Source: Macrostomum lignano (Eukaryota). From it: a stretch of 64,000 nucleotides of DNA. A program made the translations under genes and the position numbers. The notes under the pieces were generated by a model. That model had not been told where the DNA came from, made no database searches, and was given only the letters and a program-made list of their open reading frames with translations. The stretch is taken from contig NIVC01003166.1 in assembly GCA_002269645.1 (NCBI GenBank), forward strand, positions 62,001 through 126,000. The letters run 5' to 3'. Shown in pieces: positions 15,951 through 62,323 of this stretch (its first letter is position 1; every line of letters starts with the position of its first letter).

Positions 15951-15954
15951 CGCC

Positions 15955-19375: not shown

Positions 19376-22300
19376 ATGGGCTCAAATGTGAGCACCCTGT
19401 CTGAGCTAACAGGCCCAGTCAGAAATCCTCTACTTGAAAGATTCTGCTCAGCGGAGCCTCTGGTAGCTGTGGCTGACTTAGACGAGACTGAAGCTTTCTG
19501 GACAAATTTGTTAAGTCATCAGCTCTGTCCTCCCGTGACCTCTCGCGCCTCTCGCGACTTTGACGAATCTCTAGCGCTGCCTTACCTGGCCCACCTGGCT
19601 GTCAACAATCGAACTAGCGGCAATCTCAATGCACTACTTCGGAGAATCATTAAACTGACTGACGAGCTAGATGATGCTGTGCTGCAGCCGCTGGCTGATA
19701 GACAGCGCAGATCCCGGCATCTCAGCCAGCTGGGAGCTGCCCTGTTCATGGCCCGTTGTTGCATTAAATATCTGTTAGAATCGGAGAATGAGCGAAGCTT
19801 ACTTGAGCACATGGAATTCTGTCCTGTTGAGGATGACAATCAGGTGATTTGCTTTGTTATTGTGCAAACTGGCAGTCTGGTGTCTGTTTCAGATAAAATT
19901 GTCTGAAATTAAATCCTGTCAGCTATAAACATCCTACTGACAAGAAATCCTGTCAGCTATAAACATCCTACTGACAAGAAATCCTGTCAGCTATAAACAT
20001 CCTACTGACAAGAAATCCTGTCAGATATAAACATCCTACTGACAAGAAATCCTGTCAGCTATAGACATCCTACTGACAAGAAATCCTGTCAGATATAAAC
20101 ATCCTACTGACAAGAAATTCTGTCAGCTATAAACATCCTACTGACAGGAAATCCTGTCAGCTATAAACATCCTACTGACAAGAAATCCTGTCAGCTATAA
20201 ACATCCTACTGACAAGAAATCCTGTCAGCTATAAACATCCTACTGACAAGAAATCCTGTCAGCTGTAGACATCCTACTGAAATCCTGTCAGCTATAAACA
20301 TCCTACTGACAAGAAATCCTGTCAGCTATAAACATCCTACTGACAAGAAATCCTGTCAGCTATAAAACATCCTACTGACAAGAAATCCTGTCAGCTATAA
20401 GCATCCTACTGACAAGAAATCCTGTCAGCTATAGACATCCTACTGACAAGAAATCCTGTCAGCTATAGACATCCTACTGACAAGAAATCCTGTCAGCTAT
20501 AGACATCCTACTGACAAGAAATCCTGTCAGCTATAGACATCTTACTGACAAGAAATCCTGTCAGCTATAGACATCCTACTGAACTGACAAGAAATCCTGT
20601 CAGCTGTAGACATCCTACTGACAAGAAATCCTGTCAGCTGTAGACATCCTACTGACAAGAAATCCTGTCAGCTATGGACATCCCACTAGACTAGAAAAAC
20701 TCTCATCTAAAATCTTTACAGCGTCATAAATTAACCATCTCAAATTTTCGCAGGACAATGACGACAACGCATCCGTCATTGAGAAGAAGTCGTCATCTTC
20801 TGACAGCTCGCCGGACGCCTCTCAAAACTCGTCAGACAATGAAGACAATGCCGAGTCATCTTCTGCTGCACCGTCCTCGGTCGCTGCCGACTCTGGCACC
20901 ACAATAGAAGATTACGTTGAAAGTTTAGTCAAATTAGTCATTCTTCTACCTGTTGATGAGGAAGCATTTCCTGCTCTTCTAGAAGCAATCAACAGCTTGC
21001 TAGTACTGCTGAGCCTGAGAATGTACCACGGCTGCAAGTCAAGTGCCCAGCTGGCATTCTACCAGATTCTCTGTACTGGCAGATGCGCACCTTATGCCAG
21101 AAGGTTGGCGGCCACTTTAGTGCAGCAGTTTGTGGCGGCGCCGCCAGCTCCTGATCGATTGGTAGCTAGCGCGCCTCAAGCACCTTCTCAGGTAGATTAT
21201 ATAACAGGGGTATTCGTTCGGATAGTCTAATGTTTTGATTTCTCCGCTAAAGTGTTGCTCTGCGCTGATTGGCTGCTGTATATCTGTGTCTTTTTTAGCT
21301 GTGCGCTGATTGGCTGCTGTATATCTGTGTCTTTTGTAGCTGTGCGCTGATTGGCTGCTGTATATCTGTGTCTTTTGTAGCTGTGCTCTGATTGGCTGCT
21401 GTATATGTGTCTTTTGTAGCTGTGCTCTGATTGGCTGCTGTATATCTGTGTCTTTTGTAGCTGTGCGCTGATTGGCTGCTGTATATCTGTGTCTTTTGTA
21501 GCTGTGCGCTGATTGGCTGCTGTATATCTGTGTCTTTTGTAGCTGTGCGCTGATTGGCTGCTGTATATCTGTCTTTTGTAGCTGTGCGCTGATTGGCTGC
21601 TGTATATCTGTGTCTTTTGTAACTGTGCGCTGATTGGCTGCTGTATATGTGTCTTTTGTAGCTGTGCGCTGATTGGCTGCTGTATATCTGTGTCTTTTGT
21701 AACTGTGCGCTGATTGGCTGCTGTATATCTGTGTCTTTTGTAGCTGTGCGCTGATTGGCTGCTGTATATCTGTGTCTTTTGTAGCTGTGCGCTGATTGGC
21801 TGCTGTATATCTGTGTCTTTTGTAGCTGTGCGCTGATTGGCTGCTGTATATCTGTGTCTTTTGTAGCTGTGCGCTGATTGGCTGCTGTATATCTGTGTCT
21901 TTTGTAGCTGTGCGCTGATTGGCTGCTGTATATCTGTGTCTTTTGTAGCTGTGCGCTGATTGGCTGCTGTATATATGTGTCTTTTGTAGCTGTGCGCTGA
22001 TTGGCTGCTGTATATCTGTGTCTTTTGTAACTGTGCGCTGATTGGCTGTTGTATATCTGTGTCTTTTGTAGCTGTGCGCTGATTGGCTGCTGTATATCTG
22101 TGTCTTTTGTAGCTGTGCGCTGATTGGCTGCTGTATATCTGTGTCTTTTGTAACTGTGCGCTGATTGGCTGCTGTATATCTGTGTCTTTTGTAACTGTGC
22201 GCTGATTGACTGCCGCATCTGTCCCTCATGGTACTATCCAGAACTACTATCCAGAATGCATATTTTAGATATGCTTGAAATTATATACAAAGTTATTATT

Positions 22301-23440
22301 TACCTGAAATATTATACTCCAATTTATTAAGGTGTACAATGCGGCAGCGTCATTAGCAACCGGTCTATGGTACATGGTGACTCTTGGATACGGAAGTGGC
22401 AGTGGTGGCACTTCAGCAGCTTCAACCGTTTCTAAAACAGATGAGCCGGTAAGATGATAAGTCACGTGACTCAACACTGATTAAAATAAGTGATTAACTG
22501 TTTCCTCTAAATCTTTCCCATTCCCAGACTCGAGCTGAACTCAAACGCAATCTGTTGAGCCGACAGAGCCTGCTGCTCTGCCTCGCCCTCGCCCTCAGTC
22601 CCGGCTACTCTTCCAACGAAGACGAGTTGGACACGCCCTACCGTGACGCTCTGCTCGAATGCGACGCCAAGTTGCTAGGGAACTATGCCGGTCTGCTAGG
22701 CGCCATAGCAACTAATTTGCCTCAAGATGAAGCTCTGCTGCTGCTCTACCTGCTGCTCCACCCGGCCGGTTCGCACGCCCTTAGGAACCACCTGGCTTCA
22801 GCTGGGGCCAATAATCCTCAACTGTTAGCCTCGCTAACTCTGCCACTGTTGCAGTGCATTCACTCGGCTAACACTGAGCCGCAGTCGCATCGCCTGTACA
22901 TGGCTATGATCAACTTGCTCATGCTCACTGAGCAGCCCGACCTGTGCAGGGCTATGCACACCGCTCCCCTGCCTGGCGGGGCGTCGCCTGCTTGGCTAAC
23001 GGAGAGACAGCTGGGTCCGCAGGGCACTCTGGGCAGCCTACTAGTAGTAGTGCTAGCCAGATGCGTGCAGCTCAATCTGCATAAACTGGGCAGAGGCGGC
23101 GGCGGTGGTTACCTGCCGAGCAACTGCATGGCAGCGCTGGCCAATCAGTCTACTCAGGCCAGATCGCTGCATCCTTACGCCTGTCAGAAGCTGCTGGGCC
23201 TGCTGACTCTCATTGCGACTCGGATTGAGAAGCTGGAGCAGCAGAAATCGGCAACGTAAGTAGACAGCTTGAATTATTGAATGAGCATGTAGCCGCTAGC
23301 TGATAGACACTGACTCAGGCAGACAGGCAGACAGACAGACAGACATGCAGACAGACAGACAGACAGACAGACATGCAGACAGACAGATAGACAGGAAGGC
23401 AGACAGACAGACAGACAGGCAGACAGACAGACAGACATGC

Positions 23441-23492
<52 letters not shown>

Positions 23493-23530
23493 CGACAGAC
23501 AGGCAGAGAGACAGACTGACAGACACACAC

Positions 23531-23565
<35 letters not shown>

Positions 23566-23567
23566 GG

Positions 23568-23598
<31 letters not shown>

Positions 23599-23812
23599 GA
23601 AGGCAGGCAGGCAGGCAGGCAGACAGACAGACAGACATGCAGACAGACGGACATGCAGACAGACATCCAGACAGATAGACAGACAGACAGACAGACAGGC
23701 AGACAGGCAGACAGACAGGCAGACAGACATCCAGACAGACAGACAGACAGACAGACAGGCAGACAGGCAGGCAGACAGGCAGACAGACAGGCAGACAGAC
23801 AGACAGACATGC

Positions 23813-23845
<33 letters not shown>

Positions 23846-23852
23846 GCCAGAC

Positions 23853-23887
<35 letters not shown>

Positions 23888-24174
23888 GGCATGCAGACAG
23901 ACAGATAGACAGACAGACAGACAGGCAGACAGACAGGCAGACAGACAGGCAGACATGCAGACAGGCAGACATGCAGACAGACGGACATGCAGACAGACAT
24001 CCAGACAGACAGACAGATAGACAGACAGACAGACAGACAGGCAGACAGGCAGACAGACAGGCAGACAGACATCCAGACAGACAGACAGACAGACAGGCAG
24101 ACAGGCAGACAGACAGGCAGACAGACAGACAGACATGCAGACAGACAGACAGACAGACAGACAGACAGCCAGAC

Positions 24175-24224
<50 letters not shown>

Positions 24225-24262
24225 CGACAGACAGGCAGAGAGACAGACTGACAGACACACAC

Positions 24263-24313
<51 letters not shown>

Positions 24314-24315
24314 GG

Positions 24316-24346
<31 letters not shown>

Positions 24347-24572
24347 GAAGGCAGGCAGGCAGGCAGGCAGACAGACAGACAGACAGACAGACATGCAGAC
24401 AGACGGACATGCAGACAGACATCCAGACAGACAGACAGATAGACAGACAGACAGACAGACAGGCAGACAGGCAGACAGACAGGCAGACAGACATCCAGAC
24501 AGACAGACAGACAGACAGGCAGACAGGCAGGCAGACAGGCAGACAGACAGGCAGACAGACAGACAGACATGC

Positions 24573-24605
<33 letters not shown>

Positions 24606-24608
24606 GCC

Positions 24609-24668
<60 letters not shown>

Positions 24669-24682
24669 TGACAGACACACAC

Positions 24683-24725
<43 letters not shown>

Positions 24726-24727
24726 GG

Positions 24728-24758
<31 letters not shown>

Positions 24759-24848
24759 GAAGGCAGGCAGGCAGGCAGGCAGACAGACAGACAGACAGGC
24801 AGACAGGCAGGCAGACAGACAGACAGGCAGACAGACAGGCAGACAGGC

Positions 24849-24885
<37 letters not shown>

Positions 24886-26683
24886 GGAAGGCAGGCAGGC
24901 AGACAGACAGACAGACAGACAGACAGGCAGGCAGACAGACAGGCAGACAGACAGACAGACTGGCAGACAGACAGACAGACAGACAGACACAGACGGACAG
25001 GCCGCACCCCTCCCCAGCCCGCAGCAGTCCCCAAACGAGCTGGCAGCCCTAGAGGCGGCCAGCCGCAGCATCCTGGAGGTGGTTAACGGCACCCTGAGCC
25101 GGGTGAGCCTGGCCGCTAACCCGCACCTGGTGTACACCATGCTGCACCAGCGAGCCGCTCTGTTCAACAAGCGACTGCTGCAGAACCGCACAGAGCTGGC
25201 TGAGCTGGCGGCAAACCTGCTGACGGTGTCGCAGCACTTCGCCGCCGCTGTGGCGAGAGACTCGGCGGCCGGGTCAGCGGCAGCTCAGCAGCAGCAGCAG
25301 GCGGCGGATGGTGGCGAACTTGCCGCCCTGCCGCCGCCTTCGCAACTGTCCGAGGCTCGGATTATGCAGGTGAGAGGGAGAGCTCTGGTTTATTATGATG
25401 ATGTGGGCACTCAAAAGTCGGTGGATTATGTTCAGGCTTTATGTTTCGGTATTGCATTTTACGATCCCTCCTCTAATTGGCGTCGGTCAGTGTAATTAGT
25501 CACTGAGTTGAATTTTAGTCTGGGAAATCTTAGTTGTTGATACCGATATCCTAATTAGGAAAAAAACTCACGCTAGAGAAATCCCAGTTAAAGCAAACCC
25601 CAGTAATGGAAATCACAGCTAGGAAAATCCCAGTTAGGGAAATGTCGTTTAGAAGAACCACAGTTAAGGAAATCAGTTTTTTAATGAAATCCCGGATAGG
25701 TAACTTATAGTTAGGAAATTCCCGTTATGGATTTCCCAGTTAGGGAAATCCCAGTCAGGGAAACCCCAGTTATAGATATCCCAGTTAGGGAAACCCCATT
25801 GTTGTAAATTTCAGATTCGTAACTCCCAGTCAGGGAAATCCCATTGTTGTAAATCTCAGATAGGTAACTCCCAATACGAAAATTCTCGTTATGGAAATCC
25901 CAGTTCTGGAAATTACAGTTAGGGAAATCCCAATCAGGGAAATCCCAGTTAGGGAAATCCCAGTTAGGGAAATCCCAGTTAGGGAAATCCCAGTTAGGGA
26001 AATCCCAGTTAGTGAAATCCCATTGTAAATTTCAGATTCGTAACTCCCAGTTAGGGAAATCGCAGTTAGGGAAATTCCAATTAGGTAAATCCTTTTAGGG
26101 AAATTCCATTCAGAGAAACCCATCTAAAGAAATCATATTTAAGGAAATCCCAGTTAGAAAAATCCTTTTTAGGGGAATCATATTTGTAACAGTTCCAGTT
26201 GTTTGCGACATTTGAAATTATTGATAAAAAAGCATGGGTGCAAATGCTAGCTTAAAACCTTGCTTCAATCGCCTCACCAATTCGCAGGTAATCTCCTCAA
26301 GCTGCGCCAGCTTCAAACGCGAACGACTCCGCCAGTTCCCGGAGCCACGATTTAAATACGTTGAAGAGGCCAAGCCGGACGATTTTTTTGTGCCTTACAT
26401 CTGGGCTCTGGTCTACAAGCACTCGGGACTGTACTTTAACCCCGCTAGAATCACCTTATTGAAGCCGGCGGCGTCTGCTGCTTCTGCTTCCGCGTCTGCT
26501 TCCGCGTCTGCTTCCGCGCCTGCTTCCGCGCCTGCTTCTGCGTCTGCTTCCGCGTCTGCTTCTGCGTCTGCTTCCGCCGCCCGGTCTGGGACAGCAGCAA
26601 CAACAGCAGTAGCAAAAGCAGCCAAAGCCGCCACTTCCGCCTCAGTTGTTGCTTCCGCTCCAATGGAAACCACTGTTGTTTAA
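19376..26683 (+). CDS. DYM: Dymeclin; join(19376..19843,20754..21191,22528..23255,25018..25369,26288..26683), 793 aa
   Basis: Dymeclin-like segments occur in order: MGSNVS...FWTNLLS, NNRTSGNLNALL, LLSRQSLLL, NCMAALAN, LHPYACQKL, LEVVN...NPHLVYTML, and C-terminal FPEPRFKYVEEAKPDDFFVPYIW. All four introns are GT..AG with consistent phases (0,0,2,0); total 2382 nt. Confidence 0.92.
19911..20685 (+). repeat. 34-bp minisatellite in DYM intron 1
   Basis: (AAATCCTGTCAGCTATAAACATCCTACTGACAAG)n, about 22 copies. Confidence 0.95.
21262..22215 (+). repeat. 41-bp minisatellite in DYM intron 2
   Basis: (CTGTGCGCTGATTGGCTGCTGTATATCTGTGTCTTTTGTAG)n, about 23 copies. Confidence 0.95.
23320..24998 (+). repeat. 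(CAGA)n compound microsatellite in DYM intron 3
   Basis: About 1.7 kb of CAGA with CAGG/CATG interruptions and block duplications. Confidence 0.97.
25575..26170 (+). repeat. 15-bp degenerate minisatellite (AGGGAAATCCCAGTT)n in DYM intron 4
   Basis: Direct reading; best conserved at 25921-26010. Confidence 0.85.
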
Positions 26684-31565: not shown

Positions 31566-33487
31566 GAACTTCAAGACTTCTATCAATTGTCGAATGTGAG
31601 TAATCTGTAAAGCATGGAGTCTGCAGATGACCTGCAACTTCTGTGGGTCATAGAGGCTCGGAACTGTAAAGGCTTGTAAACTAACTATAGGCTTGTAAAA
31701 GACGCTTCCAATCCAGATTCTACTTTAAGGAGGCCTTGACAGGGACAGCTGGGAGCAGCGTATCTAACGAATTCCGTTCCCTGATTTGCCGTCCCTCCCC
31801 GTTTCTACTTTCGTCTCCCTCCAACCCTCGCCCACCCCTCCCACAGCCGTCCAGATGCAGATATAAAATCCCTTGGAGAGAGAGATATATCATCAATTCA
31901 GAAAGCATTCTTCTTTATTTTCTTCCCATTTCCTTCATCATTTCCCAGTATATAACAGCTAAAGGAATCTTATAGTTTAGCAACCCGTATCCATATATTT
32001 ATCCATATTTAGCCAATGAAATATATCAGCGTCTATTTAACCAAAATTCTTCGTAGAAGCAGGTGGCTGAATTAAAGATTCAACTATTTTCATTAAATTG
32101 TGCGCCTTTAAAGGTGAGGAAATATTGAGGTTTTTTCTAGCACTTGCTTCGTCAAGTTTTTCATTTGCTGCTTAGCTCTCATTTAAGTATTCAAAGTAAC
32201 AACAGAGACGTTAAGGGAGAGGAGATAGAAATGAAAGAGGGGAAAGAGAGATAGAGATGAGAGAGGAGAGAGATGAGATACCTTAAGAGAGGGGAGAGAG
32301 AGGGATAGAGATGAGAAAGGGGGAGAGAGATGAGACAGGGGAAGAGAGATGAGACAGGGGAAGAGAGATGAGACAGGGGGAGAGAGATGAGACAGTGGGA
32401 GAGAGGGATAGAGATAAAACAGGAGAGAGAGGGATAGAGATGAGACAGGGGGGGGGAGCGACAGAGATGAGACACAGGAGAGAGAGAGAGAGGGATAGAG
32501 GATGAATAACAAAAAACAACTCGAAATGAATATCTAGATATCCGCACCAATCCATTCTGAGCACTGCAAATTTCTCTAGTGTGGTATTCAATCCAATCAA
32601 GGATTGCCATAATTAATCTGGGAATTGCATATTTCCCAACGGGTGTAATCTGATCCTAGACAAAAAAAAATAATCAAAGCGGGAAAAACTGATTGAATCT
32701 ATAAGCGTCGGACGCACGACGAAATCCTTGAATCTGATTTGTACTTTTAAGAATTTGGATAGTAAGATAAAAAATAGTCTTGTTCTCGAAAATAATTATA
32801 AAATTGGCTTACAATCACAGTTTCAGCAAGAATTTTTTTACAAGAGATGCTTATATGTTAAGACAATTAGGAAATTCACGCCACATTGCGTGCTCTGAGA
32901 CTCGCTCTATCTGTGTAGGATATTTGGGGTGGGACAGGCCGATGTCGGCAATCTATGCTCTACTCTGTCTACATTTTTGTAGAACTGTAATACGAGTATA
33001 TGCAATTCTAAAAATAGCCTTGCCGAAATGCAATCGCTAAATCCCGGTGGCTAACTGCAGGGACGGACAGTACTGCGACTGTTGGGTTAGCAGTGTGAGA
33101 TTCGTGGATCGATATAAGAAGAGTAGCATCTGGGGCAGTTGCATGGCATCTTCGCGCACGCAGCATCCGCCCTGTCGCGCGCAAGAGAGAGAGAGAAAGA
33201 GAGAAGGGACAAGAATAGAGAATGGGTAAAAACCAAGCTTGGGATAGAATGTTGTGCAGAGTGGGAGGGAGGGAGAGAAGAGGCTTGGTGGTCTAGAATA
33301 GGAGTTTCGACAGTTTACATGTACCTGATTGCGTACTTTCATGCTCTAATGTTTCTTAGATGCAAGTGGCTCTCACTGATTATTTGCTTGTAACGATTTA
33401 CGATTTACATTTTTACTTTGTTTTGACCGATTCGAACCGCTAAGTTACCCAAATCCCATGCCAGTGAATTTTGAAAACAAACTTTTC

Positions 33488-33695
33488 ACCAACCCCCCAC
33501 ACAGCCAGTTCAGACCCCTCACTATCGCACCAACCCCCCACAAAACCAGTTCAGACCCCTCACTATCGCACCAACCCCCCACACAGCCAGTTCAGACCCC
33601 TCACTATCGCACCAACCCCCCACACAGCCAGTTCAGACCCCTCACTATCGCACCAACCCCCCACAGCCAGTTCAGACCCCTCACTATCGCACCAA
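33488..33695 (+). repeat. 41-bp minisatellite, 5 copies, just upstream of the repeat-protein gene
   Basis: (CACCAACCCCCCACACAGCCAGTTCAGACCCCTCACTATCG)5. Confidence 0.92.
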
Positions 33696-33775
33696 CTACC
33701 CGCAGCATTCTCCTACTCCAATCAACCAAACGTTGCTGCATCCGGCAGCCCTAGCCGGCCTGCACAATAGCCGGA

Positions 33776-36700
33776 ATGGGCAACCGAGCTAGCAGTGGTG
33801 TCGCAAATCGTCAGAATCACCATCGGGGTCGTCGGCGTCGCGGCGGCCACACCGGACCTCTAGGCGACACGACACCGGCTGACTGGCTGATGATGCTGAG
33901 TCTGCGCGGCAGCAGCGGCCTCCAAGCCTGCAACTGCGACCCGGACACCGCGGCGCTGATGCAATCAGCTTTGGCTCAGAGCTACCGGCCCGGACTGAAG
34001 TGGTGCAATCACGATGGTCGACTGTGGACAGCGAAACTGCAGGGCCAGCCGTGGCACAGTCAGTGCCCCCGCGAGATCGACCAGATGGCTAAGCACGCTC
34101 TTAGTCAATTGTTGCAATCTTTATTTAGAGCCGGCTGGCGTCATCCAGTTGCTATGGAGACGTTGAGACGCTCGCAATTGTGCATCTGGTTATTGACGAA
34201 GCAATCGCCTCTGCCGGAGACTGAAGTGTTTTGCCTGGCGCCGAGCTGCTCTGATCGACTTACTTTGCTGGGCAGACCGCCGCCTGGGGCGTACGATGCT
34301 GTGGTTGGGGCTGTGCAGCGGTGTTGGCCAAAGGGACTCAGACCTGCGGCTGCTGGGGCCCCCGGCTGCTCTCACGGTGGGTTGAGAGTGTGAGAGACGT
34401 TGTGATTTAGACTGTGGTAGAGTGAGGCTGTGGTAGAGTGAGGCTGTGGTAGAGTGATGCTGTGGTAGAGTGAGGATGTGGTAGAGTGATGCTGTGGTAG
34501 AGTGATGCTGTGGTAGAGTGAGACTGGTAGAGTGAGGCTGTGGTAGAGTGAGGCTGTGGTAAAGTGAGGCTGTGGTAGAGTGAGGCTGTGGTAGAGTGAG
34601 ACTGGTAGAGTGAGGCTGTGGTAGAGTGAGGCTGTGGTAGAGTGATGCTGTGGTAGAGTGAGACTGTGGTAGAGTGAGGCTGTGGTAGAGTGAGACTGTG
34701 GTAGATTGAGACTGTGGTAGAGTGAGGCTGTGGTAGAGTGAGGCTGTGGTGGACTAAGACTGTGGTAGAGTGAGGCTGTGGTAGAGTGAGACTGTGGTAG
34801 AGTGAGGCTGTGGTAGAGTGAGGCTGTGGTGGACTAAGACTGTGGTAGAGTGAGGCTGTGGTAGAGTGAGGCTGTGGTGGACTAAGACTGTGGTAGAGTG
34901 AGGCTGTGGTGGACTAAGACTGTGGTAGAGTGAGGCTGTGGTAGGGTGAGGCTGTGGTGGACTAAGACTGTGGTAGAGTGAGGCTGTGGTAGAGTGAGGC
35001 TGTGGTAGAGTGAGACTGTGGTAGAGTGAGACTGTGGTAGAGTGAGGCTGTGGTAGAGTGAGACTGTGGTGGACTAAGACTGTGGTAGAGTGAGGCTGTG
35101 GTAGAGTGAGGCTGTGGTGGACTAAGACTGTGGTAGAGTGAGGCTGTGGTAGAGTGAGGCTGTGGTGGACTAAGACTGTGGTAGAGTGAGGCTGTGGTAG
35201 AGTGAGGCTGTGGTAGAGTGAGGCTGTGGTAGAGTGAGACTGTGGTAGATTGAGGCTGTGGTAGAGTGAGACTGTGGTAGATTGAGACTGTGGTAGAGTG
35301 AGGCTGTGGTAGAGTGAGGCTGTGATGGACTAAGACTGTGGTAGAGTGAGGCTGTGGTAGAGTGAGGCTGTGGTGGACTAAGACTGTGGTAGAGTGAGGC
35401 TGTGGTAGAGTGAGGCTGTGGTGGACTAAGACTGTGGTAGAGTGAGGCTGTGATAGAGTGAGGCTGTGGTGGACTAAGACTGTGGTAGAGTGAGGCTGTG
35501 GTAGAGTGAGGCTGTGGTGGACTAAGACTGTGGTAGAGTGAGGCTGTGGTGGACTAAGACTGTGGTAGAGTGAGGCTGTGGTAGAGTGAGACTGTGGTAG
35601 AGTGAGGCTGTGGTAGAGTGAGACTGTGGTAGATTGAGACTGTGGTAGAGTGAGGCTGTGGTAGAGTGAGGCTGTGGTAGAGTGAGGCTGTGGTGGACTA
35701 AGACTGTGGTAGAGTGAGGCTGTGGTAGAGTGAGGCTGTGGTGGACTAAGACTGTGGTAGAGTGAGGCTGTGGTAGAGTGAGGCTGTGGTAGAGTGAGAC
35801 TGTGGTAGAGTGAGACTGGTAGAGTGAGGCTGTGGTAGAGTGAGACTGTGGTAGATTGAGACTGTGGTAGAGTGAGGCTGTGGTAGAGTGAGGCTGTGGT
35901 GGACTAAGACTGTGGTAGAGTGAGGCTGTGGTAGAGTGAGGCTGTGGTGGACTAAGACTGTGGTAGAGTGAGGCTGTGGTAGAGTGAGGCTGTGGTAGAG
36001 TGAGACTGTGGTAGATTGAGGCTGTGGTAGAGTGAGACTGTGGTAGATTGAGACTGTGGTAGAGTGAGGCTGTGGTAGAGTGAGGCTGTGGTGGACTAAG
36101 ACTGTGGTAGAGTGAGGCTGTGGTAGAGTGAGGCTGTGGTGGACTAAGACTGTGGTAGAGTGAGGCTGTGGTAGAGTGAGGCTGTGGTAGAGTGAGACTG
36201 TGGTAGAGTGAGGCTGTGGTAGAGTGAGGCTGTGGTGGACTAAGACTGTGGTAGAGTGAGGCTGTGGTAGAGTGAGGCTGTGGTGGACTAAGACTGTGGT
36301 AGAGTGAGGCTGTGGTGGACTAAGACTGTGGTAGAGTGAGGCTGTGGTAGAGTGAGGCTGTGGTAGACTAAGACTGTGGTAGAGTGAGGCTGTGGTAGAG
36401 TGAGGCTGTGGTGGACTAAGACTCTGGTAGAGTGAGGCTGTGGTGGACTAAGACTGTGGTAGAGTGAGGCTGTGGTAGAGTGAGGCTGTGGTAGAGTGAG
36501 ACTGTGCTATAGTAAGGCTGAGACAATGGTGAGGCATTTTGAGAAGCTGACAGTACACTGTGGAATAGACAGACATGCACCTGCAACTTATAGAATAAAT
36601 TGTTTTATGGAAGACGGCCGCACCGTGTGAAATTTCCCCTACTCAGACAATCAGCTCAATGAGCAGCAGCAGGGAACTACCGAGCTGCGTCTTCGAGGTA

Positions 36701-38364
36701 ATCCGTGGAACGCCTACGAACGCGAACTGCGTGACGCGTCGCAGTGTCTGGCCGCCTGCGCAGCCGCCATTGGCGATATTAAAGAAGTCAGAGACGACAG
36801 AGCCGATGGAGTGAGATGGCGGCTGGCCATGGCCTGCTGCGTGAGAGCGAGCCAGCCCAGCTGTCTGTTTTTCTACTCGCGTTCGGTCAGGGGTGAACTT
36901 CTGGTTCGCAAGAATGGAGGAGAAAACGACGGCGAGATTGGAAATATTCATCAATCCAACAAAGGCGAAGGCGAGGGCGAGAGCAATGGGACTAGTGTGG
37001 CTACTAAGTTGGATTATCGCTATCGATTGTTGGGATTTTCGCCGCCAGATTATGTGCGACTGTTGCCGTGTAGGTTGCCTATCGAGCAGTACCTAGTGGG
37101 AGATGCGATAGGAGGATCGGGTGTAGAGGGAGAGGGGATCGAGAAAGTCGAGGGAGATGGGGTAGAGAGGAGAGGGGGTAGAAAGGGAAAGGGGGTAGAG
37201 AGGGAGAAGGGGATAGCGAGGGAGAGGGGGTAGAGAGGGGGATGGGGTAGAGAGGGAGAGGGGGAAAGAGAGGGAGAGGAGAAAGAGAGGGAGAGGGTGT
37301 AGAGAGGGAGAGGGTGTAGAGAGGGAGAGGGTGTAGAGAGGGAGAGGGGGAAACAGAGGGAGAGGGGGAAAGAGAGGGAGAGGGGAAAGAGAGGGAGAGG
37401 GGGAAAGAGAGGGAGAGGGTGTAGAGAGGGAGAGGGGGGAAGATGGAAGGTCAGGGACAGCTAGGGAGAGGGAAAGGGGTGTTAGTTAGAAAGAAAGAAG
37501 ATATATAAAGGTAGAGAGAGGCAGTTTTGGACAGTAGCTAATGTAAGAAGACTGCAAGTTGCACAAGGAAGAATAGAGACGGAAAGACAGTAAGAACAAG
37601 AGTGAAAGTCAAGGCCATAAGGCAGAAAAAAAACAGATTATAAAAATGCAGTAATTCAATTCCAATTACTTGCAGCGGACCAAGCCCTGCTTTCGGCCAT
37701 GTACCACCGACTCACCAAGTCTTCAAGGTCACCTTGCCAACAACAGCAACAACAGGAGCAGCTCCTAGAAGAGCAGCAGCGGCAGCCGCTTCAACAGCAG
37801 CACAAGCACCTTCGCCTTGGCGGGTCTCCATGGCGACCAGACACGCCTGTTGCTGCCCGCTCCGCCCGCCTAGCGGTTCTTGAACTGTTGAACGCGGCTG
37901 CATGGTCAGTTGGCGTCCCGGAATGCTGGCTACCCAGCCAGCCAATCAGAGCGTCTGGTCGGGTAACCGAGAAGCCCTATCTGCTGCTTAGCAGTGATTC
38001 CAAGCGCTCAGAATACGACAGTTCGCAGCGGCGTCAGCGTTTCGTCTGTCTGGCACCCTCCGGTAGCAGCGCCCTGATGTTGGCTGGAGCAACAAGAGCT
38101 GAGTCTCGATTGGTCCGCGACACCTTGGAGTCTGCTGGCGCCCTGGCAGACGAGGAAGAGTTTACTAACGCTAAAGCCTCGCTTGTTGTTGTCGGTTTCC
38201 AGTTGAATCGTCGGTTTTGGTCTACCGGAGGGTCCGGCGGCGGCGGCGGAGGCTTGGCTTCCGCCACGACCTGCTGCTGCTGCTGTTGCTGTTGCTGCGT
38301 GGCGGCGGAGGAGGTCAGGGAACAGCCGGTCATTGGCTTCTGCTTGCTTTGCTCACTAGACTGA
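33776..38364 (+). CDS. Uncharacterised protein of ~4 internal alpha/beta repeats; join(33776..34376,36647..37120,37676..38364), ~587 aa
   Basis: Three separate ORF pieces share repeat motifs (xxCLAPSxS..L.L; KLQGQPW / LRLRGNPW / LRLGGSPW) and join in frame through phase-1 GT/AG sites (cacg|gtgggt, ctactcag|, tcgg|gtgtag, ttgcag|). The exon 2 donor (gtgtag) is weak, so that boundary is tentative. Confidence 0.72.
34412..36510 (+). repeat. 16-bp minisatellite (CTGTGGTAGAGTGAGG)n filling intron 1 of the repeat-protein gene
   Basis: About 130 copies, interspersed with the variant CTGTGGTGGACTAAGA. Confidence 0.97.
37125..37480 (+). repeat. GA-rich polypurine tract (intron 2 of the repeat-protein gene)
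   Basis: Direct reading. Confidence 0.85.
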
Positions 38365-38613
38365 CTAGGAGCGAGTGCGGTTTCCGCCTGCTGTGCGCTT
38401 CAGATGTGGCGTCGCGTTTAGTGAGCAGATCGGACACGGTGCCTGAGGACTGGCCGACACTGTGGCTGGCTGCACCGGCTGTTGAGTCAGCCGATGAGGC
38501 CCGGCAAGATTTTGTTTGAAGTGTTTTTTGTTTAACTGTGTAGCTGGAGAGGGTGAGGCTGAGTTTGATTTGCGAGCGCCGTAGCCTAATGGATTCCCAA
38601 TGCTTGTGCAATC

Positions 38614-38745
38614 AAGGCCCTTGAGGGCCAACCCCCAAGGCACAGTGAAGTGTACATGCCTAACGATAAATAAAGTTAGGGCCGCTGTACACTCCTGTGT
38701 GAGTGTGTGCCTGCGCGTATCCGCGCGCTTGTGTGCCTGCTCAGG
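38614..38745 (+). mobile_element. Third, truncated copy of the same SINE (middle body)
   Basis: Near-identical to 5339-5482 (gccaacccccaagg..cagtgaagtgtacatgcctaacgata...tgcctgctcagg). Confidence 0.8.
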
Positions 38746-39594
38746 TGATTGCCAAACCCATTTATTTGGCTTTGAACGCCAAGCCCCCAAGGTCCTTGTG
38801 TACTTCCCTGAGCATGAGATGTTTTTTGCTGCTTTGTGATTGTCTCGTTGATTTTCCTTTCATTGCGAAAAAAAACTACAACATTGATTTTTGCGTGACG
38901 AAAATACTCCAATAAAGATTTTATTTCATTGTTCTTGTTTATGCTGCTTCTGATTGGATTTACCAATCGGTGGCATTGCGAGTCATCGGAAGTGTCTTGT
39001 CTTGTACTTATTGCTGACGTTGTAGTTATTTTTTAGTGCCATAGATAGAATATCAGGTATGTTTATTCGTCTCTATCTGCCTGTTTGTGATCTGATTATG
39101 CCCTATTTTTTCATCGCTAAAGTGTGAGCTGGAGCCGTTAAATGGATTTGAATTTATAGAAGTCTAATTTTCTAACCCTCCAACCGCGCTTCAGTAAGCT
39201 GCACTTTGGAATATAAAGCTTCCGTTTCCTATAGTATTGGACAACCACTTTATCAACTTGCTGCTGTTCTTCCTTCCTTTCCATCCTTATCGGCGATCTC
39301 CCTCCATCAAATCTTCAATTGACAATCCTGCCTCACCTTTATCCTAGGCAGCTGAAGCACTACTGTATAAGCGCTTCTATGCCGTGTTTATAGTAAAGTA
39401 CAATGGGGGGCTTACAGACCAGTTCTAGCCCTTGGCTCCTAAGCAAATACGAGCTATTTGAAGAATAAATTCTAAAGCAGCTTTTTAGTAAGTGCTTCAG
39501 TGCGCTGACAAATTCTAAAGAGAATTTGCTCAGGACTTTAAATTGGATTGACTCAAACACGACTCAAGATGGAGGGCTATTCACACGTGACTCT

Positions 39595-41024
39595 GAATAA
39601 AGCGATTCGGACACGACTCTAAATGGGGTGATTCAGACACGAGTCTAAATGGAGTGATTTAGACACGAGTCTAAATGGGGCGATTTAGACACGAGTCTAA
39701 ATGGGGTGATTTAGACACGAGTCTAAATGGGGCGATTTAGACACGAGTCTAAATAGGGCGATTCAGACACGAGTCTAAATAGGGCGATTCAGACACGAGT
39801 CTAAATAACGCGATTCAGACACGAGTCTAAATGGGGTGATTTAGACACGAGTCTAAATGGGGCGATTTAGACACGAGTCTAAATGGGGTGATTTAGACAC
39901 GAGTCAAAATGGAGCGATTCAGACACGAGACTAAATAGGGCGATTCAGACACGAGTCTAAATGGGGTGATTCAGACACGAGTCTAAGCGGGGTGATTCAG
40001 ACACGAGTCTAAATAGGGCGATTCAGACACGAGTCTAAATAGGGCGATTCAGACACGAGTCTAAATAACGCGATTCAGACACGAGTCTAAATAACGCGAT
40101 TCAGACACGAGTCTAAATGGGGTGATTTAGACACGAGTCTAAATGGGGCGATTTAGACACGAGTCTAAATGGGGTGATTTAGACACGAGTCTAAGCGGGG
40201 TGATTCAGACACGAGTCTAAATAGGGCGATTCAGACACGAGTCTAAATGGGGCGATTTAGACACGAGTCTAAATGGGGTGATTCAGACACGAGTCTAAAT
40301 GGGGTGATTCAGACACGAGTCTAAGCGGGGTGATTCAGACACGAGTCTAAATAGGGCGATTCAGACACGAGTCTAAATAGGGCGCTTCGGACACGAATCT
40401 AAATGGGGCGATTCAGACACGAGTCTAAATAGGGCGATTCAGACACGAGTCTAAATAACGCGATTCAGACACGAGTCTAAGTGGGGCGATTCAGGCACGA
40501 GTCTAAATAGGGCGATTCAGACACGAGTCTAAATAACGCGATTCAGACACGAGTCTAAATGAGGCGATTCAGGCACGAGTCTAAATGGGGCGATTCAGAC
40601 ACGAGTCTAAATAACGCGATTCAGACACGAGTCTAAATAGGGCACTTCGGACACGAGTCTAAATGGGCGATTCAGACACGAGTCAAAATGGAGCGATTCA
40701 GACACGAGACTAAATAGGGCGATTCAGACACGAGTCTAAATAGGGCGATTCAGACACGAGTCTAAATAGGGCGATTCAGACACGAGTCTAAATAGGGCGA
40801 TTCAGACACGAGTCTAAATAGGGCGCTTCGGACACGAGTCTAAATAGGGCGCTTCGGACACGAGTCTAAATAGGGCGATTCAGACACGAGTCAAAATGGA
40901 GCGATTCAGACACGAGACTAAATAGGGCGATTCAGACACGAGTCTAAATAGGGCGATTCAGACACGAGTCTAAATAGGGCGATTCAGACACGAGTCTAAA
41001 TAGGGCGCTTCGGACACGAGTCTA
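39595..41024 (+). repeat. 26-bp palindromic minisatellite (AGACACGAGTCTAAATGGGGCGATT(C/T))n
   Basis: About 55 copies; the core (T/C)AGAC-ACGA-GTCTA is an inverted repeat. Confidence 0.96.
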
Positions 41025-54900: not shown

Positions 54901-57900
54901 GTATGACGATCTCGCCGAAGACTTTGCGCCTGGGTGCCCGCAGCCCTCCTGCAAATATCTATTAATTTTTAAAGGAGGGAAATGAATAAAAGGGATTTGA
55001 GATTAAAGCAGGTTGAGCTGCTTCGAAAATTGAATACGAAGCGACCTAAGAAAGGGTTTGCGTGCGGCCTACAAAGGCAGATTAAAAAAATGCATTGACT
55101 TCAAAAAGTGCTAAATTTAGACGATTAATTATGAAGGAAACCATATTTCATATTTATAAAGGAAAATATGAAGATTAGCACTAGTTGGGACTGCGCGTTG
55201 AGCATCACATGTTGAAACCTCGCTGCCATTCTGCAAACAGTCTGCTTCAAATATTCTCCTCTACTTATCTGGAAGCTCGCAACGTTTTCTGCACTTAACG
55301 ATTTTGTTTATAGCCTGCAAACATTGCCTGTCTCTGTTGAGTGCTTTTCAATATCTGTATTGCCCGAGGAAAATTTGGTTTTCTACAATGCGTCTTAGCG
55401 AGCTTGGCAAATGTAATTTTGATAGCTGTCTTCGGCAAAAAGACAGTTCAAGTTTCGCTCTGAGAGCCTTTAACTCCGATTGGTTTGCTACAGTACATGT
55501 ACATGTGTATGATACTGCCATATTTACTACACGTGCACATTGCTGTTTCAGGTGCGCACACGGAGTCTGTTAGATACCTGGTTGAATCACTGTCTCGTTC
55601 ATCCGGTTATAACGGCTGTCACGTTCTCAGGGTGACCGCTTTTCAAGCTGGGCCCACGTCGCCTATCCTTCTCTGCCAGATTGCTTTCACTCGCAGCCAG
55701 CCAATCAGCGCCTTCGGGGCAATAGACCCTCAGGATGAGTCATCTAGCAGCCAGCCAATCAGCCCCGTCGGGGCAATAGACCCTCAGGATGAGTCATCTA
55801 GCAGCCAGCCAATCAGCGCCTGCCCACTACCAGAAGTGCTTCCCAAACAAGAGTCATTTCTTGCAGCCCAGCTCCACTCTACTAATCTGCTCAGCCAGAA
55901 GCAGCGCAACTACATCGAGAAACGACTTTGCGAAGCTCGCACCTCAGCCATCGAACTTCGACCTTGCAATCCATTCGAGTTTTTTCGCTTATCTCCTGCA
56001 GCTCAACCTTCTGTAGAGTTTTGGATCCGATTAAAAGCAGAATTTTTGCCAACAAACACGCTGCACTAACGCCGCTGCAAAAGCAGATTTTAATGGTATT
56101 CCTAAGCGACAAGGGTCTGCTTAGAGGCGGCGAGGTGACGCGACCGGACGAGCGATTCCATCGGAAGGTTTCTCTGGATCATAGAATTGCGTTTCACGAA
56201 CTGGACGTTGATCCGTTCGAGTGGAGTTTGTACAGGGCGAGCTGCATCAGAGCTGGTGAGCGCTGGCTGGGCTGGGACGGTGGGACGATGATGCGAGGCT
56301 ACAACACCAGGACTCTAAGACATCAAGACAATATGACACTAGGACAATAGGACACTTGGACACCAGGACACCAGGACACTAGGACACCAGGACACTAGGA
56401 CACTGGGACACAAGGACACCAGGACAATAGGAAATCAGGACACCAGGACACTAGGACACCAGGACAATAGGAAATCAGGACACTAGGACACCAGGACACT
56501 AGGACACCAGGACACTAGGACACCAGGACAATAGGACATCAAGACAATAGGACACTAGGACAATAGGACACTAGGACACCAGGACAATAGGAAATCAGGA
56601 CACCAGGACACTAGGACACCAGGACACTAGGACACCAGGACAATAGGACATCAAGACAATAGGACACTAGGACAATAGGACACTAGGACACCAGGACAAT
56701 AGGAAATCAGGACACCAGGACACTAGGACACCAGGACACTAGGACAACAGGACACTAGGACACCAGGACACTAGGACACTGGGACACTAGGACAATAGAA
56801 CACCAGGACAATAGGAAATCAGGACACTAGGACACCAGGACACTAGGACACCAGGACACTAGGACACCAGGACAATAGGACATCAAGACAATAGGACACT
56901 AGGACAATAGGACACTAGGACACCAGGACAATAGGAAATCAGGACACCAGGACACTAGGACACCAGGACACTAGGACACCAGGACAATAGGACATCAAGA
57001 CAATAGGACACTAGGACAATAAGACACTAGGACACCAGGACAATAGGAAATCAGGACACCAGGACACTAGGACACCAGGACACTAGGACAACAGGACACT
57101 AGGACACCAGGACACTAGGACACTGGGACACTAGGACAATAGAACACCAGGACAATAGGAAATCAGGACACTAGGACACCAGGACACTAGGACACCAGGA
57201 CACTAGGACACCAGGACAATAGGACATCAAGACAATAGGACACTAGGACAATAGGACACTAGGACACCAGGACAATAGGAAATCAGGACACCAGGACACT
57301 AGGACACCAGGACACTAGGACACCAGGACACTAGGACACCAGGACACTAGGACACCAGGACACTAGGACACTGGGACACTAGGACAATAGAACACCAGGA
57401 CAATAGGACACCAGGACACTAGGACACCAGGACACTAGGACACCAGGACACTAGGACACCAGGACAATAGGACACCAGGACACTAGGACACCAGGACAAT
57501 AGGACACTAGGACACCAGGATACTAGGACACCAGGACACTAGGACACCAGGACAATAGGACACCAGGACACTAGGACACCAGGACAATAGGACACTAGGA
57601 CACCAGGACACTAGGACACCAGGACACTAGGACACCAGGACACTAGGACACCAGGACAATAGGACACCAGGAAAATAGGACACCAGAAAAATAGGACACC
57701 AGGACAATAGGACACCAGGAAAATAGGACACCAGGAAAATAGGACACCAGGACAATAGGACACCAGGACACTAGGACACCAGGACAATAGGACACCAGGA
57801 CAATAGGACACCAGGACACTAGGACACCAGGACAATAGGAAATCAGGACACTTGGACACCAGGACACTAGGACACCAGGACAATAGGAAATCAGGACACT

Positions 57901-62261: not shown

Positions 62262-62323
62262 ATTTTAGTAACATTTTTGACAAATGTATATTTAATATTT
62301 TTGAAGGTGTACGTATAGCGCTG

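What the first reader, a model, noticed from the sequence alone, without database searches (positions are those of the whole stretch)
33776..38364. Hidden 3-exon gene for a putatively lipid-anchored protein with four copies of an unnamed alpha/beta repeat
Seen: three ORFs that look unrelated in the track splice in frame across a 2.1-kb satellite. Repeats: R1 MLSLRGSSGLQA...KLQGQPW...LLQSLFRAGW; R2 FCLAPSCSDRLTLL...QRCWPKGL...LRLRGNPW; R3 LLGFSPPDYVRLL...LRLGGSPW; R4 VCLAPSGSSALML...FQLNRRFW. The N-terminus MGNRAS fits N-myristoylation, and a Cys9 run lies near the C-terminus. From memory, a similar repeat ([hydrophobic]-S..D.LRL...W..GI...KL.G.PW) occurs in uncharacterised fungal and invertebrate proteins; I know no function for it. 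Inference: a membrane-tethered tandem-domain protein of an unstudied family.
Basis: partly seen in the sequence, partly recalled or inferred. Interest (0 to 1): 0.75.

Follow-up and report, generated by a model that had tools for sequence, protein, structure and literature searches.

The report
Lipid-anchored four-repeat flatworm gene, frameshifted
The three open reading frames are exons of one real flatworm gene: a fast-evolving copy of a widespread, unnamed family of probably membrane-anchored proteins made of four repeats of a fold so far solved only in a trypanosome protein, though this copy has a frameshift near its end.

Summary
The window is Macrostomum lignano DNA. The three ORFs are exons of one gene. 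The second donor is 37069, not 37120.

The four repeats are real. A repeat model built from relatives finds them at aa 38-142, 149-280, 326-440 and 462-526, in the same order as in the canonical four-repeat proteins.

The family is broad: cnidarians, nematode, rotifers, arthropods, many fungi and a diplonemid. All members are labelled 'hypothetical', with no Pfam or NCBIfam model. In the sequences fetched here:
- 71 of 77 long members that start MG begin MGxxxS.
- 37 of 85 carry a C-terminal PPxY, against about 9 in shuffled tails.

AlphaFold gives a ββαββαββ module. Its best solved match is Trypanosoma cruzi Q4D6Q6 (TM 0.70), a homotetramer of unknown function.

This copy lacks 28 bp in a (TGC)n tract. 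The conserved second half of repeat 4 therefore lies in another frame and ends at 38519. The Cys run is a translated microsatellite in a loop.

Most likely function: a myristoyl and polybasic membrane-tethered scaffold. This is inferred, not shown.

The parts
33776..34376 (+). Exon 1: start codon, MGNRAS myristoylation-type motif, polybasic stretch, repeat 1 and the first half of repeat 2 (aa 1-200 plus 1 nt)
   Evidence: In-frame model. No indels against the two paralogous loci, and the GT donor is conserved. The family profile matches aa 33-277 across this exon and the next.
33776..33850 (+). N-terminal membrane-targeting candidate: M-G-N-R-A-S (33776-33793), then HHRGRRRRGGH (33818-33850), in a segment predicted to be disordered
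   Evidence: M1 and G2 are invariant in alignment A3. 71 of 77 long MG-starting members are MGxxxS. Residues 1-27 have pLDDT below 50 in the paralogue model. Myristoylation itself was not tested.
34377..36646 (+). Intron 1 (GTGGGT...CTCAG), almost filled by a 16-bp satellite, CTGTGGTAGAGTGAGG x132 (34412-36520)
   Evidence: The intron is about 2.6 kb in L001 and about 0.8 kb in L002, so array length varies.
36647..37069 (+). Exon 2: second half of repeat 2, a variable acidic/Gly linker, and the first strand of repeat 3. It ends at donor GTAGGT (37070)
Evidence: Paralogue models P0001 and P0002 read ...DYVRLLP|S|DQALL.... No indels between copies.
37070..37675 (+). Intron 2 (GTAGGT...TTGCAG) with a 17-bp purine-rich satellite (37150-37438)
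37676..38519 (+). Exon 3 coding part as defined by the intact paralogue: rest of repeat 3, repeat 4, and stop at 38517-38519. In this copy the frame breaks at 38299/38300, so the uninterrupted ORF stops at 38362-38364
   Evidence: Three-way DNA alignment and three-frame translations. Profile match of the alternative frame.
33887..34201 (+). Repeat 1 (aa 38-142), the best preserved module
   Evidence: Repeat HMM 50.8 bits, E 9e-18. pLDDT about 95 in the paralogue model. Scores best with the R1-specific HMM.
34220..36885 (+). Repeat 2 (aa 149-280), split by intron 1. Coding parts are 34220-34376 and 36647-36885
   Evidence: Repeat HMM 26.5 bits, E 3e-10. pLDDT 80-95. Scores best with the R2-specific HMM.
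37021..37971 (+). Repeat 3 (aa 326-440), split by intron 2, with a Gln-rich insertion replacing the W..GIQ loop. Coding parts are 37021-37069 and 37676-37971
   Evidence: Repeat HMM 12.5 bits, E 7e-6. pLDDT 70-86. Scores best with the R3-specific HMM.
38035..38229 (+). Repeat 4, first half (aa 462-526: ...VCLAPSGSSALML...FQLNRRFW)
   Evidence: Repeat HMM 6.9 bits, E 4e-4. Family profile positions up to 415.
38230..38300 (+). Low-complexity loop encoded by (GGC)n and (TGC)n tracts (GGSGGGGGGLASATTCCCCCCCCC). The 28-bp deletion relative to both paralogues lies at 38299/38300
   Evidence: L001 and L002 both carry TCTGCTGCTCCTGCGGTGGCAACAGCGC here. L002 reads through in frame.
38310..38489 (+). 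Repeat 4, second half (GHWLLLALLTRLTRSECGFRLLCASDVASRLVS..VPEDWPTLWLA). In this copy it is in a different frame from the upstream CDS
   Evidence: hmmsearch of the family profile against the translation of 38217-38519: 18.7 bits, E 3e-8, profile positions 416-475.
38669..38674 (+). AATAAA, a candidate polyadenylation signal 150 nt after the family-frame stop
   Evidence: Pattern search. Not verified by transcripts.

Best explanation
This is a real three-exon protein-coding gene of Macrostomum lignano. It is a lineage-specific, fast-evolving paralogue of a widespread but unnamed eukaryotic protein family.

Canonical members are about 500 aa long. They start MGxxxS, contain four tandem modules of about 110 aa, and often end in a disordered Pro-rich tail with PPxY. 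Shorter versions with two modules also exist. Each module folds as ββαββαββ, the topology of the T. cruzi protein Q4D6Q6, which forms a propeller-like homotetramer. The four tandem modules therefore most likely form a single-chain pseudo-tetramer.

Proposed mechanism (inferred):
- Gly2 is N-myristoylated.
- Together with the adjacent Arg-rich stretch, this tethers the protein to the cytosolic face of a membrane.
- The four-module body acts there as a rigid binding scaffold.

Canonical relatives probably also recruit NEDD4-type ubiquitin ligases through PPxY. This flatworm paralogue has lost that tail and has gained Gln-, Gly- and Cys-rich microsatellite-encoded loops.

As assembled, the copy in this window carries a 28-bp deletion in its (TGC)n tract. 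This puts the last half-module out of frame. The copy is therefore either a defective duplicate or allele, or mis-assembled. A collinear paralogue (L002) reads through to a 630-aa protein.
For: Gene and species:
- The only close hits are M. lignano proteins (93% and 89% identity).
- Their loci are collinear with the window over at least 20 kb.
- Those models derive from RNA-seq assemblies (PMC5730564) and share junction 1 and the 37069 donor.

Family membership:
- An exhaustive profile search found 44 distant homologues (E 1.5e-14 to 8e-4).
- The reverse family profile hits the model at E 7e-29, colinearly. hhalign gives 99.5%.
- There are four repeats, and each scores best with the same-ordinal repeat model.

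Fold:
- The canonical member has pLDDT 90.3 and pTM 0.89, with ββαββαββ four times.
- The flatworm paralogue has pLDDT above 90 in R1-R2.
- Foldseek's top hit is Q4D6Q6 (TM 0.64-0.70).
- The same PDB entry is the best or second-best sequence-profile hit. hhalign gives 68%.
- The tetramer and topology are described in PMC10899635.

Membrane link:
- MGxxxS in 71 of 77.
- Some members have a PH domain in its place.
- PPxY in 37 of 85, against 8.8±2.4 in shuffles.

Selection:
- Domain codons show 17 synonymous and 15 non-synonymous changes, omega about 0.29, p=5e-4.
- Linkers show omega about 2.

Frameshift.
Against: - There is no transcript or read evidence for this particular copy.
- Two of the three copies have frame breaks in exon 3.
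- Repeats 3 and 4 are very degenerate (12.5 and 7 bits, against 70-128 in canonical proteins).
- Many family-conserved residues are replaced.
- The protein has no PPxY tail.
- Myristoylation, membrane binding and any partner are untested.
- The closest solved structure has no known biochemical function.
- The structure prediction was made on the 93%-identical paralogue, not on the window's own spliced product.
Confidence: 0.7

Rival explanations
1. Decaying pseudogene. The locus is a redundant duplicate of the canonical family gene (P0004 type) that is drifting. It is filling with microsatellite-derived low-complexity sequence and frameshifts, and no longer makes a functional protein.
For: - 28-bp frame-breaking deletion in the window copy, and several 1-bp indels in L001.
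- Repeat scores fall from 51 to 7 bits along the protein.
- Linker omega is about 2.
- There are no orthologues between the near-identical M. lignano copies and the distant family.
- The genome is known to be highly redundant (PMC5730564).
Against: - Exons 1-2 have no indels and keep their splice sites in all three copies.
- Domain codons show an excess of synonymous changes (omega 0.29, p=5e-4).
- L002 has an intact 630-aa ORF that ends with the family-conserved half-module.
- Paralogous loci are transcribed and spliced.
- AlphaFold folds R1-R2 with pLDDT above 90.
- Frame breaks could be assembly errors in repeat tracts.
Confidence: 0.2
2. The protein ends at 38364, and its Cys9 run close to the C-terminus is S-palmitoylated. 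The protein would then be doubly lipid-anchored, with myristate at the N-terminus and palmitate at the C-terminus.
For: - The ORF as assembled does stop at 38362-38364, about 20 residues after the Cys run.
- Cys clusters can be palmitoylated (general knowledge).
- The Cys-rich tract is kept, in variable form, in the paralogues (CCCCCCFCCVCCSC).
Against: - The residues after the Cys run in this frame have no counterpart in the family. The other frame encodes the conserved helix-strand-strand of repeat 4 (E 3e-8).
- Both paralogous loci have 28 extra bp that restore that frame.
- The tract is a slippage-prone (TGC)n repeat whose length differs between copies.
- In the intact form it sits in an internal loop.
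Confidence: 0.08
3. Three unrelated ORFs that only appear to splice in frame by chance.
For: None beyond the fact that satellite arrays separate the ORFs. Pairwise self-similarity of the repeats is weak.
Against: - One family profile runs colinearly through all three ORFs, with modules split by both introns.
- The same exon structure and junctions appear in transcript-derived models of two paralogues.
Confidence: 0.02

Closest known systems
Unnamed eukaryotic 2x/4x-repeat family. Examples: Nematostella vectensis LOC5517127 (XP_001637156.2), Acropora and Oculina 'uncharacterized proteins', Plectus sambesii A0A914WAG5, Cryptococcus neoformans CNAG_00144, Allomyces AMAG_01311, M. lignano BOX15_Mlig033074
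   Same: Same four modules in the same order. Same MGxxxS start. Same motifs ([h]-S..D.LRL, W..GI, KL.G.PW, GW.L, D.S...D..FF). Same predicted ββαββαββ fold.
   Different: - Much more divergent: 7-51 bits per repeat against 70-128.
- A 20-residue polybasic insertion after the myristoylation motif.
- Gln-, Gly/acidic- and Gly/Cys-rich insertions in loops and linkers.
- No Pro-rich PPxY tail.
- This copy is frameshifted in repeat 4.
- The family itself has no name, no Pfam model and no studied member that I could find.
Q4D6Q6 (T. cruzi; PDB 6XYB/6XYD) and its T. brucei orthologue Q586B2
   Same: One module superposes on the Q4D6Q6 monomer (TM 0.64-0.70, rmsd 3.3-4.6 A) with the same ββαββαββ topology. 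There is a weak but consistent sequence signal in the helix-GW-strand...D..lFF part. Q4D6Q6 forms a homotetramer, and there are four tandem modules here.
   Different: - Q4D6Q6 is a single module of about 115 aa, reported as restricted to trypanosomatids and bodonids.
- Q586B2 is reported as a secreted IL-10-inducing virulence factor (PMC10899635).
- It has no lipid-anchor motif or PPxY tail that I know of.
- Sequence similarity is not significant on its own (E about 1).
- Homology is plausible but not proven.
Myristoyl plus basic-cluster membrane anchors (Src, MARCKS and retroviral MA type); for canonical relatives, myristoylated PPxY proteins such as arenavirus Z and some retroviral Gag, and PY-motif NEDD4 adaptors (Ndfip, ARRDC)
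   Same: It works alike in principle. An N-terminal MGxxxS followed by an Arg-rich disordered stretch is the classic two-signal membrane anchor. Canonical family members add a PPxY tail, the ligand of NEDD4-family WW domains.
   Different: There is no sequence or fold relationship, so this is an analogy only. The window protein lacks a PPxY in a disordered region. Its only PPDY sits in the first strand of repeat 3.

Membership tests
Unnamed MGxxxS / 4x ββαββαββ-repeat family (Nematostella LOC5517127, CNAG_00144, Mlig033074 type) | Significant, colinear sequence match to the family profile | tested here: met
   - Library-wide hits at E 1.5e-14 and below.
- Reverse profile 110.7 bits, covering aa 33-277 and 368-527.
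- hhalign 99.5%.
- BLASTP against P0004, E 6e-17.
Unnamed MGxxxS / 4x ββαββαββ-repeat family | Four tandem modules in the canonical order | tested here: met
   Four repeat-HMM matches. Each scores best with the same-ordinal model R1-R4.
Unnamed MGxxxS / 4x ββαββαββ-repeat family | N-terminal Met-Gly-x-x-x-Ser | tested here: met
   MGNRAS at 33776-33793. The family has 71 of 77 MGxxxS, with M1 and G2 invariant in A3.
Unnamed MGxxxS / 4x ββαββαββ-repeat family | ββαββαββ fold of each module | tested here: met
   AlphaFold of the 93%-identical paralogue P0001: R1 and R2 are complete with pLDDT about 90, and R3 is partly formed at 70-86. R4 was not modelled.
Unnamed MGxxxS / 4x ββαββαββ-repeat family | Complete last module in frame (...GW.L..SADVS...D..SWWF) | tested here: not met
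   In the window it lies in another frame because of a 28-bp deletion. It is in frame in paralogue L002.
Unnamed MGxxxS / 4x ββαββαββ-repeat family | Disordered C-terminal tail with PPxY (present in about 44% of members, so not strictly defining) | tested here: not met
   The tail is ...APAVESADEARQDFV. The only PP.Y is PPDY, inside repeat 3 strand 1.
Q4D6Q6/Q586B2 family (PDB 6XYB, 6XYD) | ββαββαββ topology and structural superposition | tested here: met
   Foldseek probability 1.00. TM (target-normalised) is 0.70 for the canonical member and 0.64-0.68 for the flatworm paralogue. Topology as described in PMC10899635.
Q4D6Q6/Q586B2 family (PDB 6XYB, 6XYD) | Significant sequence similarity | tested here: inconclusive
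   6xyb_A is the best or second-best of only two PDB sequence hits, at E 1-1.6. hhalign gives probability 68%, pairwise E 4.6e-5.
Q4D6Q6/Q586B2 family (PDB 6XYB, 6XYD) | Propeller-like tetrameric assembly | not testable with these tools
Four tandem modules and pTM 0.89 are consistent with a single-chain pseudo-tetramer, but this is inference.
N-myristoyltransferase substrates | Gly2 after the initiator Met, small or uncharged residues at positions 3-5, Ser/Thr at position 6 | tested here: met
   M-G-N-R-A-S-S. I recall from memory, not verified here, that calcineurin B begins MGNEAS.
N-myristoyltransferase substrates | Covalent myristate demonstrated | not testable with these tools
   Needs metabolic labelling or mass spectrometry.
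C-terminal Cys-cluster palmitoyl anchors | Cys cluster at a conserved, terminal, membrane-proximal position | tested here: not met
   The Cys run is a (TGC)n tract of variable length in a loop of repeat 4. It ends about 72 residues before the C-terminus in the intact paralogue, and canonical family members lack it.

The most novel reading that the evidence does not exclude
The 'kinetoplastid-specific' Q4D6Q6/Q586B2 fold is not kinetoplastid-specific. It is the building block of an ancient, pan-eukaryotic, still unnamed superfamily found in animals, fungi and diplonemids. There it occurs as two or four tandem copies that mimic the trypanosome homotetramer in a single chain. These proteins are N-myristoylated (or fused to a PH domain) and carry PPxY tails. 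That would make them a previously unrecognised class of membrane-anchored NEDD4/ESCRT-linked adaptors. The flatworm gene is a degenerate offshoot that has lost the ligase-recruiting tail.
Probability: 0.4. Interest if true: 0.65.

Novelty: new variant of a known kind. Interest (0 to 1): 0.5.

Why it matters
- It shows that a domain family present from fungi (including Cryptococcus) to corals, rotifers, nematodes and flatworms still has no name, no Pfam model and no studied member.
- Its conserved features are MGxxxS, an occasional PH domain instead, and an enriched PPxY tail. Together they point to a testable role at membranes with NEDD4-type ligases.
- It links that family structurally to Q4D6Q6/Q586B2. 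That fold was described as kinetoplastid-specific and is discussed as a trypanosome virulence factor. The link gives both sides an evolutionary context.
- For genome annotation: in this satellite-rich genome, exons separated by kilobases of tandem repeats can be joined reliably by family profiles. Microsatellite tracts inside coding loops create frame differences between copies. All three copies of this gene are incompletely or wrongly represented: P0001 is truncated, P0002 starts at an internal Met, and the window copy is frameshifted.

Tried and rejected
- Pfam, NCBIfam and PDB sequence searches with the spliced protein and with family members gave no family.
- Pairwise self-alignment of the four repeats was only marginal, so the repeat claim was tested with an external family HMM instead.
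- The spliced protein could not be submitted to the exhaustive search or to structure prediction. Paralogues P0001 and P0002 and exon translations were used instead.
- The profile submitted lost the exon-3-only columns (446 positions), so repeat 4 was not part of that search.
- Literature searches for the locus tags (Mlig032275, Mlig028875, Mlig033074, CNAG_00144, CNA01320, LOC5517127) found nothing relevant.
- Foldseek against viral structures gave nothing meaningful.
- Foldseek matches to MurA/EPSP synthase and to aspartokinase ACT domains were rejected: TM 0.1-0.14 or rmsd 15-20 A, low probability.
- The UniRef name 'HET domain-containing protein' for a cluster member (P0175) is not supported by Pfam.
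- Intron positions do not match between this gene and the canonical M. lignano member P0004. They neither help nor hurt the case for paralogy.
- I tried to identify the T. brucei assemblosome chains 6SGA FQ-FU that share the fold. Three papers did not resolve it.
- Rfam found no RNA family in the window.

Full report
**Source and gene structure**

A word-seeded search found only two close relatives. Both are 'hypothetical proteins' of the flatworm Macrostomum lignano: P0001 (93% identity) and P0002 (89%). Their loci, L001 (NIVC01000438.1) and L002 (NIVC01000437.1), are collinear with the window over at least 20 kb at 88-98% identity. The window is therefore M. lignano DNA, and the three loci are segmental, homeologous or allelic copies. 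This fits the documented redundancy of that genome (PMC5730564).

The GenBank models come from genome-guided RNA-seq assemblies (StringTie/TACO plus TransDecoder), so their junctions are transcript-derived.
- P0001 confirms junction 34376/36647 exactly (...GCSH|DNQLNE...).
- Both models use an earlier exon-2 donor...LLP|S|DQALL..., which is 37069 with GTAGGT at 37070.
It would insert 17 residues that have no counterpart in relatives.
- The corrected model is 570 aa.
- Intron 1 is almost entirely a 16-bp satellite (132 copies). Intron 2 holds a 17-bp array. Intron lengths differ between the copies.

**Is it a family?**

Pfam and a PDB sequence search returned nothing for the spliced protein, and NCBIfam returned nothing for the paralogue P0001 and three relatives. 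An exhaustive profile search of 1.84 billion representative proteins found 44 distant homologues (E 1.5e-14 to 8e-4). They are about 250 or about 500 aa long and match the query's repeat 1-2 region at one, two or more places.

Two further profile searches and cluster look-ups gave the taxonomic range:
- corals, Nematostella and a jellyfish;
- the nematode Plectus;
- bdelloid rotifers;
- a springtail, a copepod and Bradysia flies;
- many fungi (Allomyces, Catenaria, Rhizophlyctis, Mortierella relatives, Cryptococcus including CNAG_00144, Kwoniella, Pleurotus, Rhodotorula, Cryomyces);
- the diplonemid Lacrimia.

M. lignano also has a canonical 501-aa member, P0004. Every source name but one is 'hypothetical', 'uncharacterized', 'predicted' or 'unnamed'; the exception, a UniRef 'HET domain' label on P0175, has no Pfam support. 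None has a Pfam hit. I found no paper on any locus tag.

**The four repeats**

Pairwise self-alignment is only marginal. A 111-position repeat HMM built from 80 repeats of 20 canonical members (19 of them from other organisms) finds four modules in the window protein:
- aa 38-142 (50.8 bits);
- aa 149-280 (26.5 bits);
- aa 326-440 (12.5 bits);
- aa 462-526 (6.9 bits).

Canonical proteins score 70-128 bits per repeat, so this gene is a very degenerate member. The full-length family profile aligns colinearly (hhalign 99.5%). Each repeat scores best with the model of the same-ordinal repeat. The protein therefore descends from a four-repeat ancestor.

The in-frame match to the family stops at profile position 415, right after FQLNRRFW. 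Positions 416-475 form the helix-GW-strand...SADVS...D..SWWF part of repeat 4. They are encoded in the frame of ORF 38217-38519 (GHWLLLALLTRLTRSECGFRLLCASDVASRLVS..VPEDWPTLWLA; 18.7 bits, E 3e-8).

A three-way DNA alignment shows that L001 and L002 both carry 28 bp (TCTGCTGCTCCTGCGGTGGCAACAGCGC) after window 38299 that the window lacks. With them, L002 reads through to a 630-aa protein ending ...DFV.

Three points follow:
- The Cys run is the translation of a slippage-prone (TGC)n tract, next to a (GGC)n tract, in the loop between strand 4 and helix 2 of repeat 4.
- The tail VAAEEVREQPVIGFCLLCSLD is a frameshift product.
- L001 has additional 1-bp indels, which explains the truncated model P0001.

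Whether these breaks are real or assembly errors cannot be decided without reads.

**Is it under selection?**

Among the three copies, codons in the predicted modules show 17 synonymous and 15 non-synonymous changes (omega about 0.29; binomial p=5e-4). Tails and linkers show 3 and 19 (omega about 2) (earlier pairwise estimates). Exons 1 and 2 have no indels and keep their splice sites. The lineage has therefore been a functional coding gene at least until recently.

**Fold**

AlphaFold2 on a canonical member (P0039, 74-sequence alignment) gave mean pLDDT 90.3 and pTM 0.89. It shows four modules of ββαββαββ and a disordered tail.

The flatworm paralogue P0001 gave pLDDT above 90 for R1-R2 and 70-86 for R3. 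The N-terminus (1-27) and the linkers are disordered.

Foldseek against the PDB ranks Q4D6Q6 of Trypanosoma cruzi (6XYD/6XYB) first for the canonical model: TM 0.70 normalised by target, rmsd 3.3 A, probability 1.00. The same entries are among the top hits for the flatworm model (TM 0.64-0.68). Both searches also hit several T. brucei mitoribosome-assemblosome chains that contain the same module.

Independently, 6xyb_A is the best or second-best of only two sequence-profile hits in the whole PDB. The E-values are non-significant (1-1.6), but the family's GW.L...D..lFF motif aligns. hhalign gives 68%.

PMC10899635 describes Q4D6Q6 as a ββαββαββ monomer that forms a propeller-like homotetramer of unknown function. 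It reports its T. brucei orthologue Q586B2 as a secreted IL-10-inducing virulence factor, and the family as restricted to trypanosomatids and bodonids.

Four tandem modules with a high pTM suggest a single-chain pseudo-tetramer. I could not verify the arrangement because coordinates are not exposed.

**Mechanism (inferred)**

- Of 106 family members of 440 aa or more in the set, 77 start MG, and 71 of those are MGxxxS, the N-myristoyltransferase pattern.
- The window protein starts MGNRAS. Uniquely, a disordered HHRGRRRRGGH stretch follows. This is the classic myristate-plus-basic membrane signal (established for Src, MARCKS and MA-type proteins; analogy only).
- Two members carry a PH domain instead of the MG start. 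That again points to membranes.
- PPxY occurs in the last 80 residues of 37 of 85 MG-starting members, against 8.8±2.4 in shuffled tails. The usual context is PPPSY[SD]EA. PPxY is the ligand of NEDD4-family WW domains (established knowledge).

I therefore propose that canonical members are membrane-anchored pseudo-tetrameric adaptors that recruit such ligases. The flatworm paralogue keeps the anchor and the body but has lost the PPxY tail. None of this has been tested experimentally.

**Verdict**

One junction and the C-terminus are wrong, and the C-terminal Cys anchor idea falls.

The gene itself is an ordinary, degenerate and possibly defective paralogue. The more interesting result is the family behind it and its structural link to Q4D6Q6.

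Noticed in passing
window 19376-25495 (+): A dymeclin gene (Pfam PF09742), also starting MGSNVS. It is split into exons at 19376-19906, 22555-23259 and about 25100-25495. Its introns are filled by satellites: a 34-mer at 19911-20697, a 41-mer at 21253-22213 and (CAGA)n at 23316-25000. Satellite-filled introns are therefore general in this region.
   Followed up: partly
window 1961-3745 (-), 5880-6425 (-), 51923-53044 (-): Other coding pieces: a Gln-rich HMG-box protein ORF (PF00505, E 3e-14), a Lin-7-like L27+PDZ exon, and a rhodopsin-type GPCR-like ORF (7tm_1, E 6e-6, below Pfam's cut-off).
   Followed up: partly
window, whole length (e.g. 9890-12093, 13812-15951, 39573-41024, 56335-57930, 58269-60027, 62323-63322): About twenty long tandem arrays with periods of 4-46 bp occupy a large share of the 64 kb. 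A 41-mer x5 array (33487-33696) ends about 80 bp before the start codon of the gene studied.
   Followed up: no
L001 10001-15300 and L002 8434-12191: Both GenBank models of the paralogues are incomplete. P0001 is truncated by 1-bp indels in exon 3. P0002 starts at an internal Met, although an intact exon 1 lies upstream (L002 8434-9034). A full 630-aa ORF can be read at L002. Intron 1 is about 2270, 2612 and 784 bp in the window, L001 and L002. Intron 2 is about 606, 1061 and 1081 bp.
   Followed up: yes
family members P0031, P0170 (ENA assemblies): These relatives have a PH domain (PF00169, E 1e-10) N-terminal to the repeats instead of the MGxxxS start. This is an alternative membrane-targeting device in the same family.
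   Followed up: partly
PDB 6SGA chains FQ-FU, 9HNY chains FQ-FT: Several Trypanosoma brucei mitoribosomal small-subunit assembly-complex chains contain a domain with the same fold as the repeat module (Foldseek probability 0.8-1.0, most at least 0.9). I could not establish which assembly factors they are or whether they are paralogues of Q4D6Q6.
   Followed up: partly
family members P0191, P0266, P0267 (Bradysia odoriphaga, B. coprophila): Two-repeat proteins of the fungal/rotifer type occur in fungus gnats but were not seen in other insects in these searches. The patchy distribution could reflect loss, horizontal transfer or contamination.
   Followed up: no
cluster of P0004, member P0175 (UniRef A0A1I8G0T3): One source names it 'HET domain-containing protein'. 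A Pfam scan finds no HET domain or any other domain in it.
   Followed up: yes
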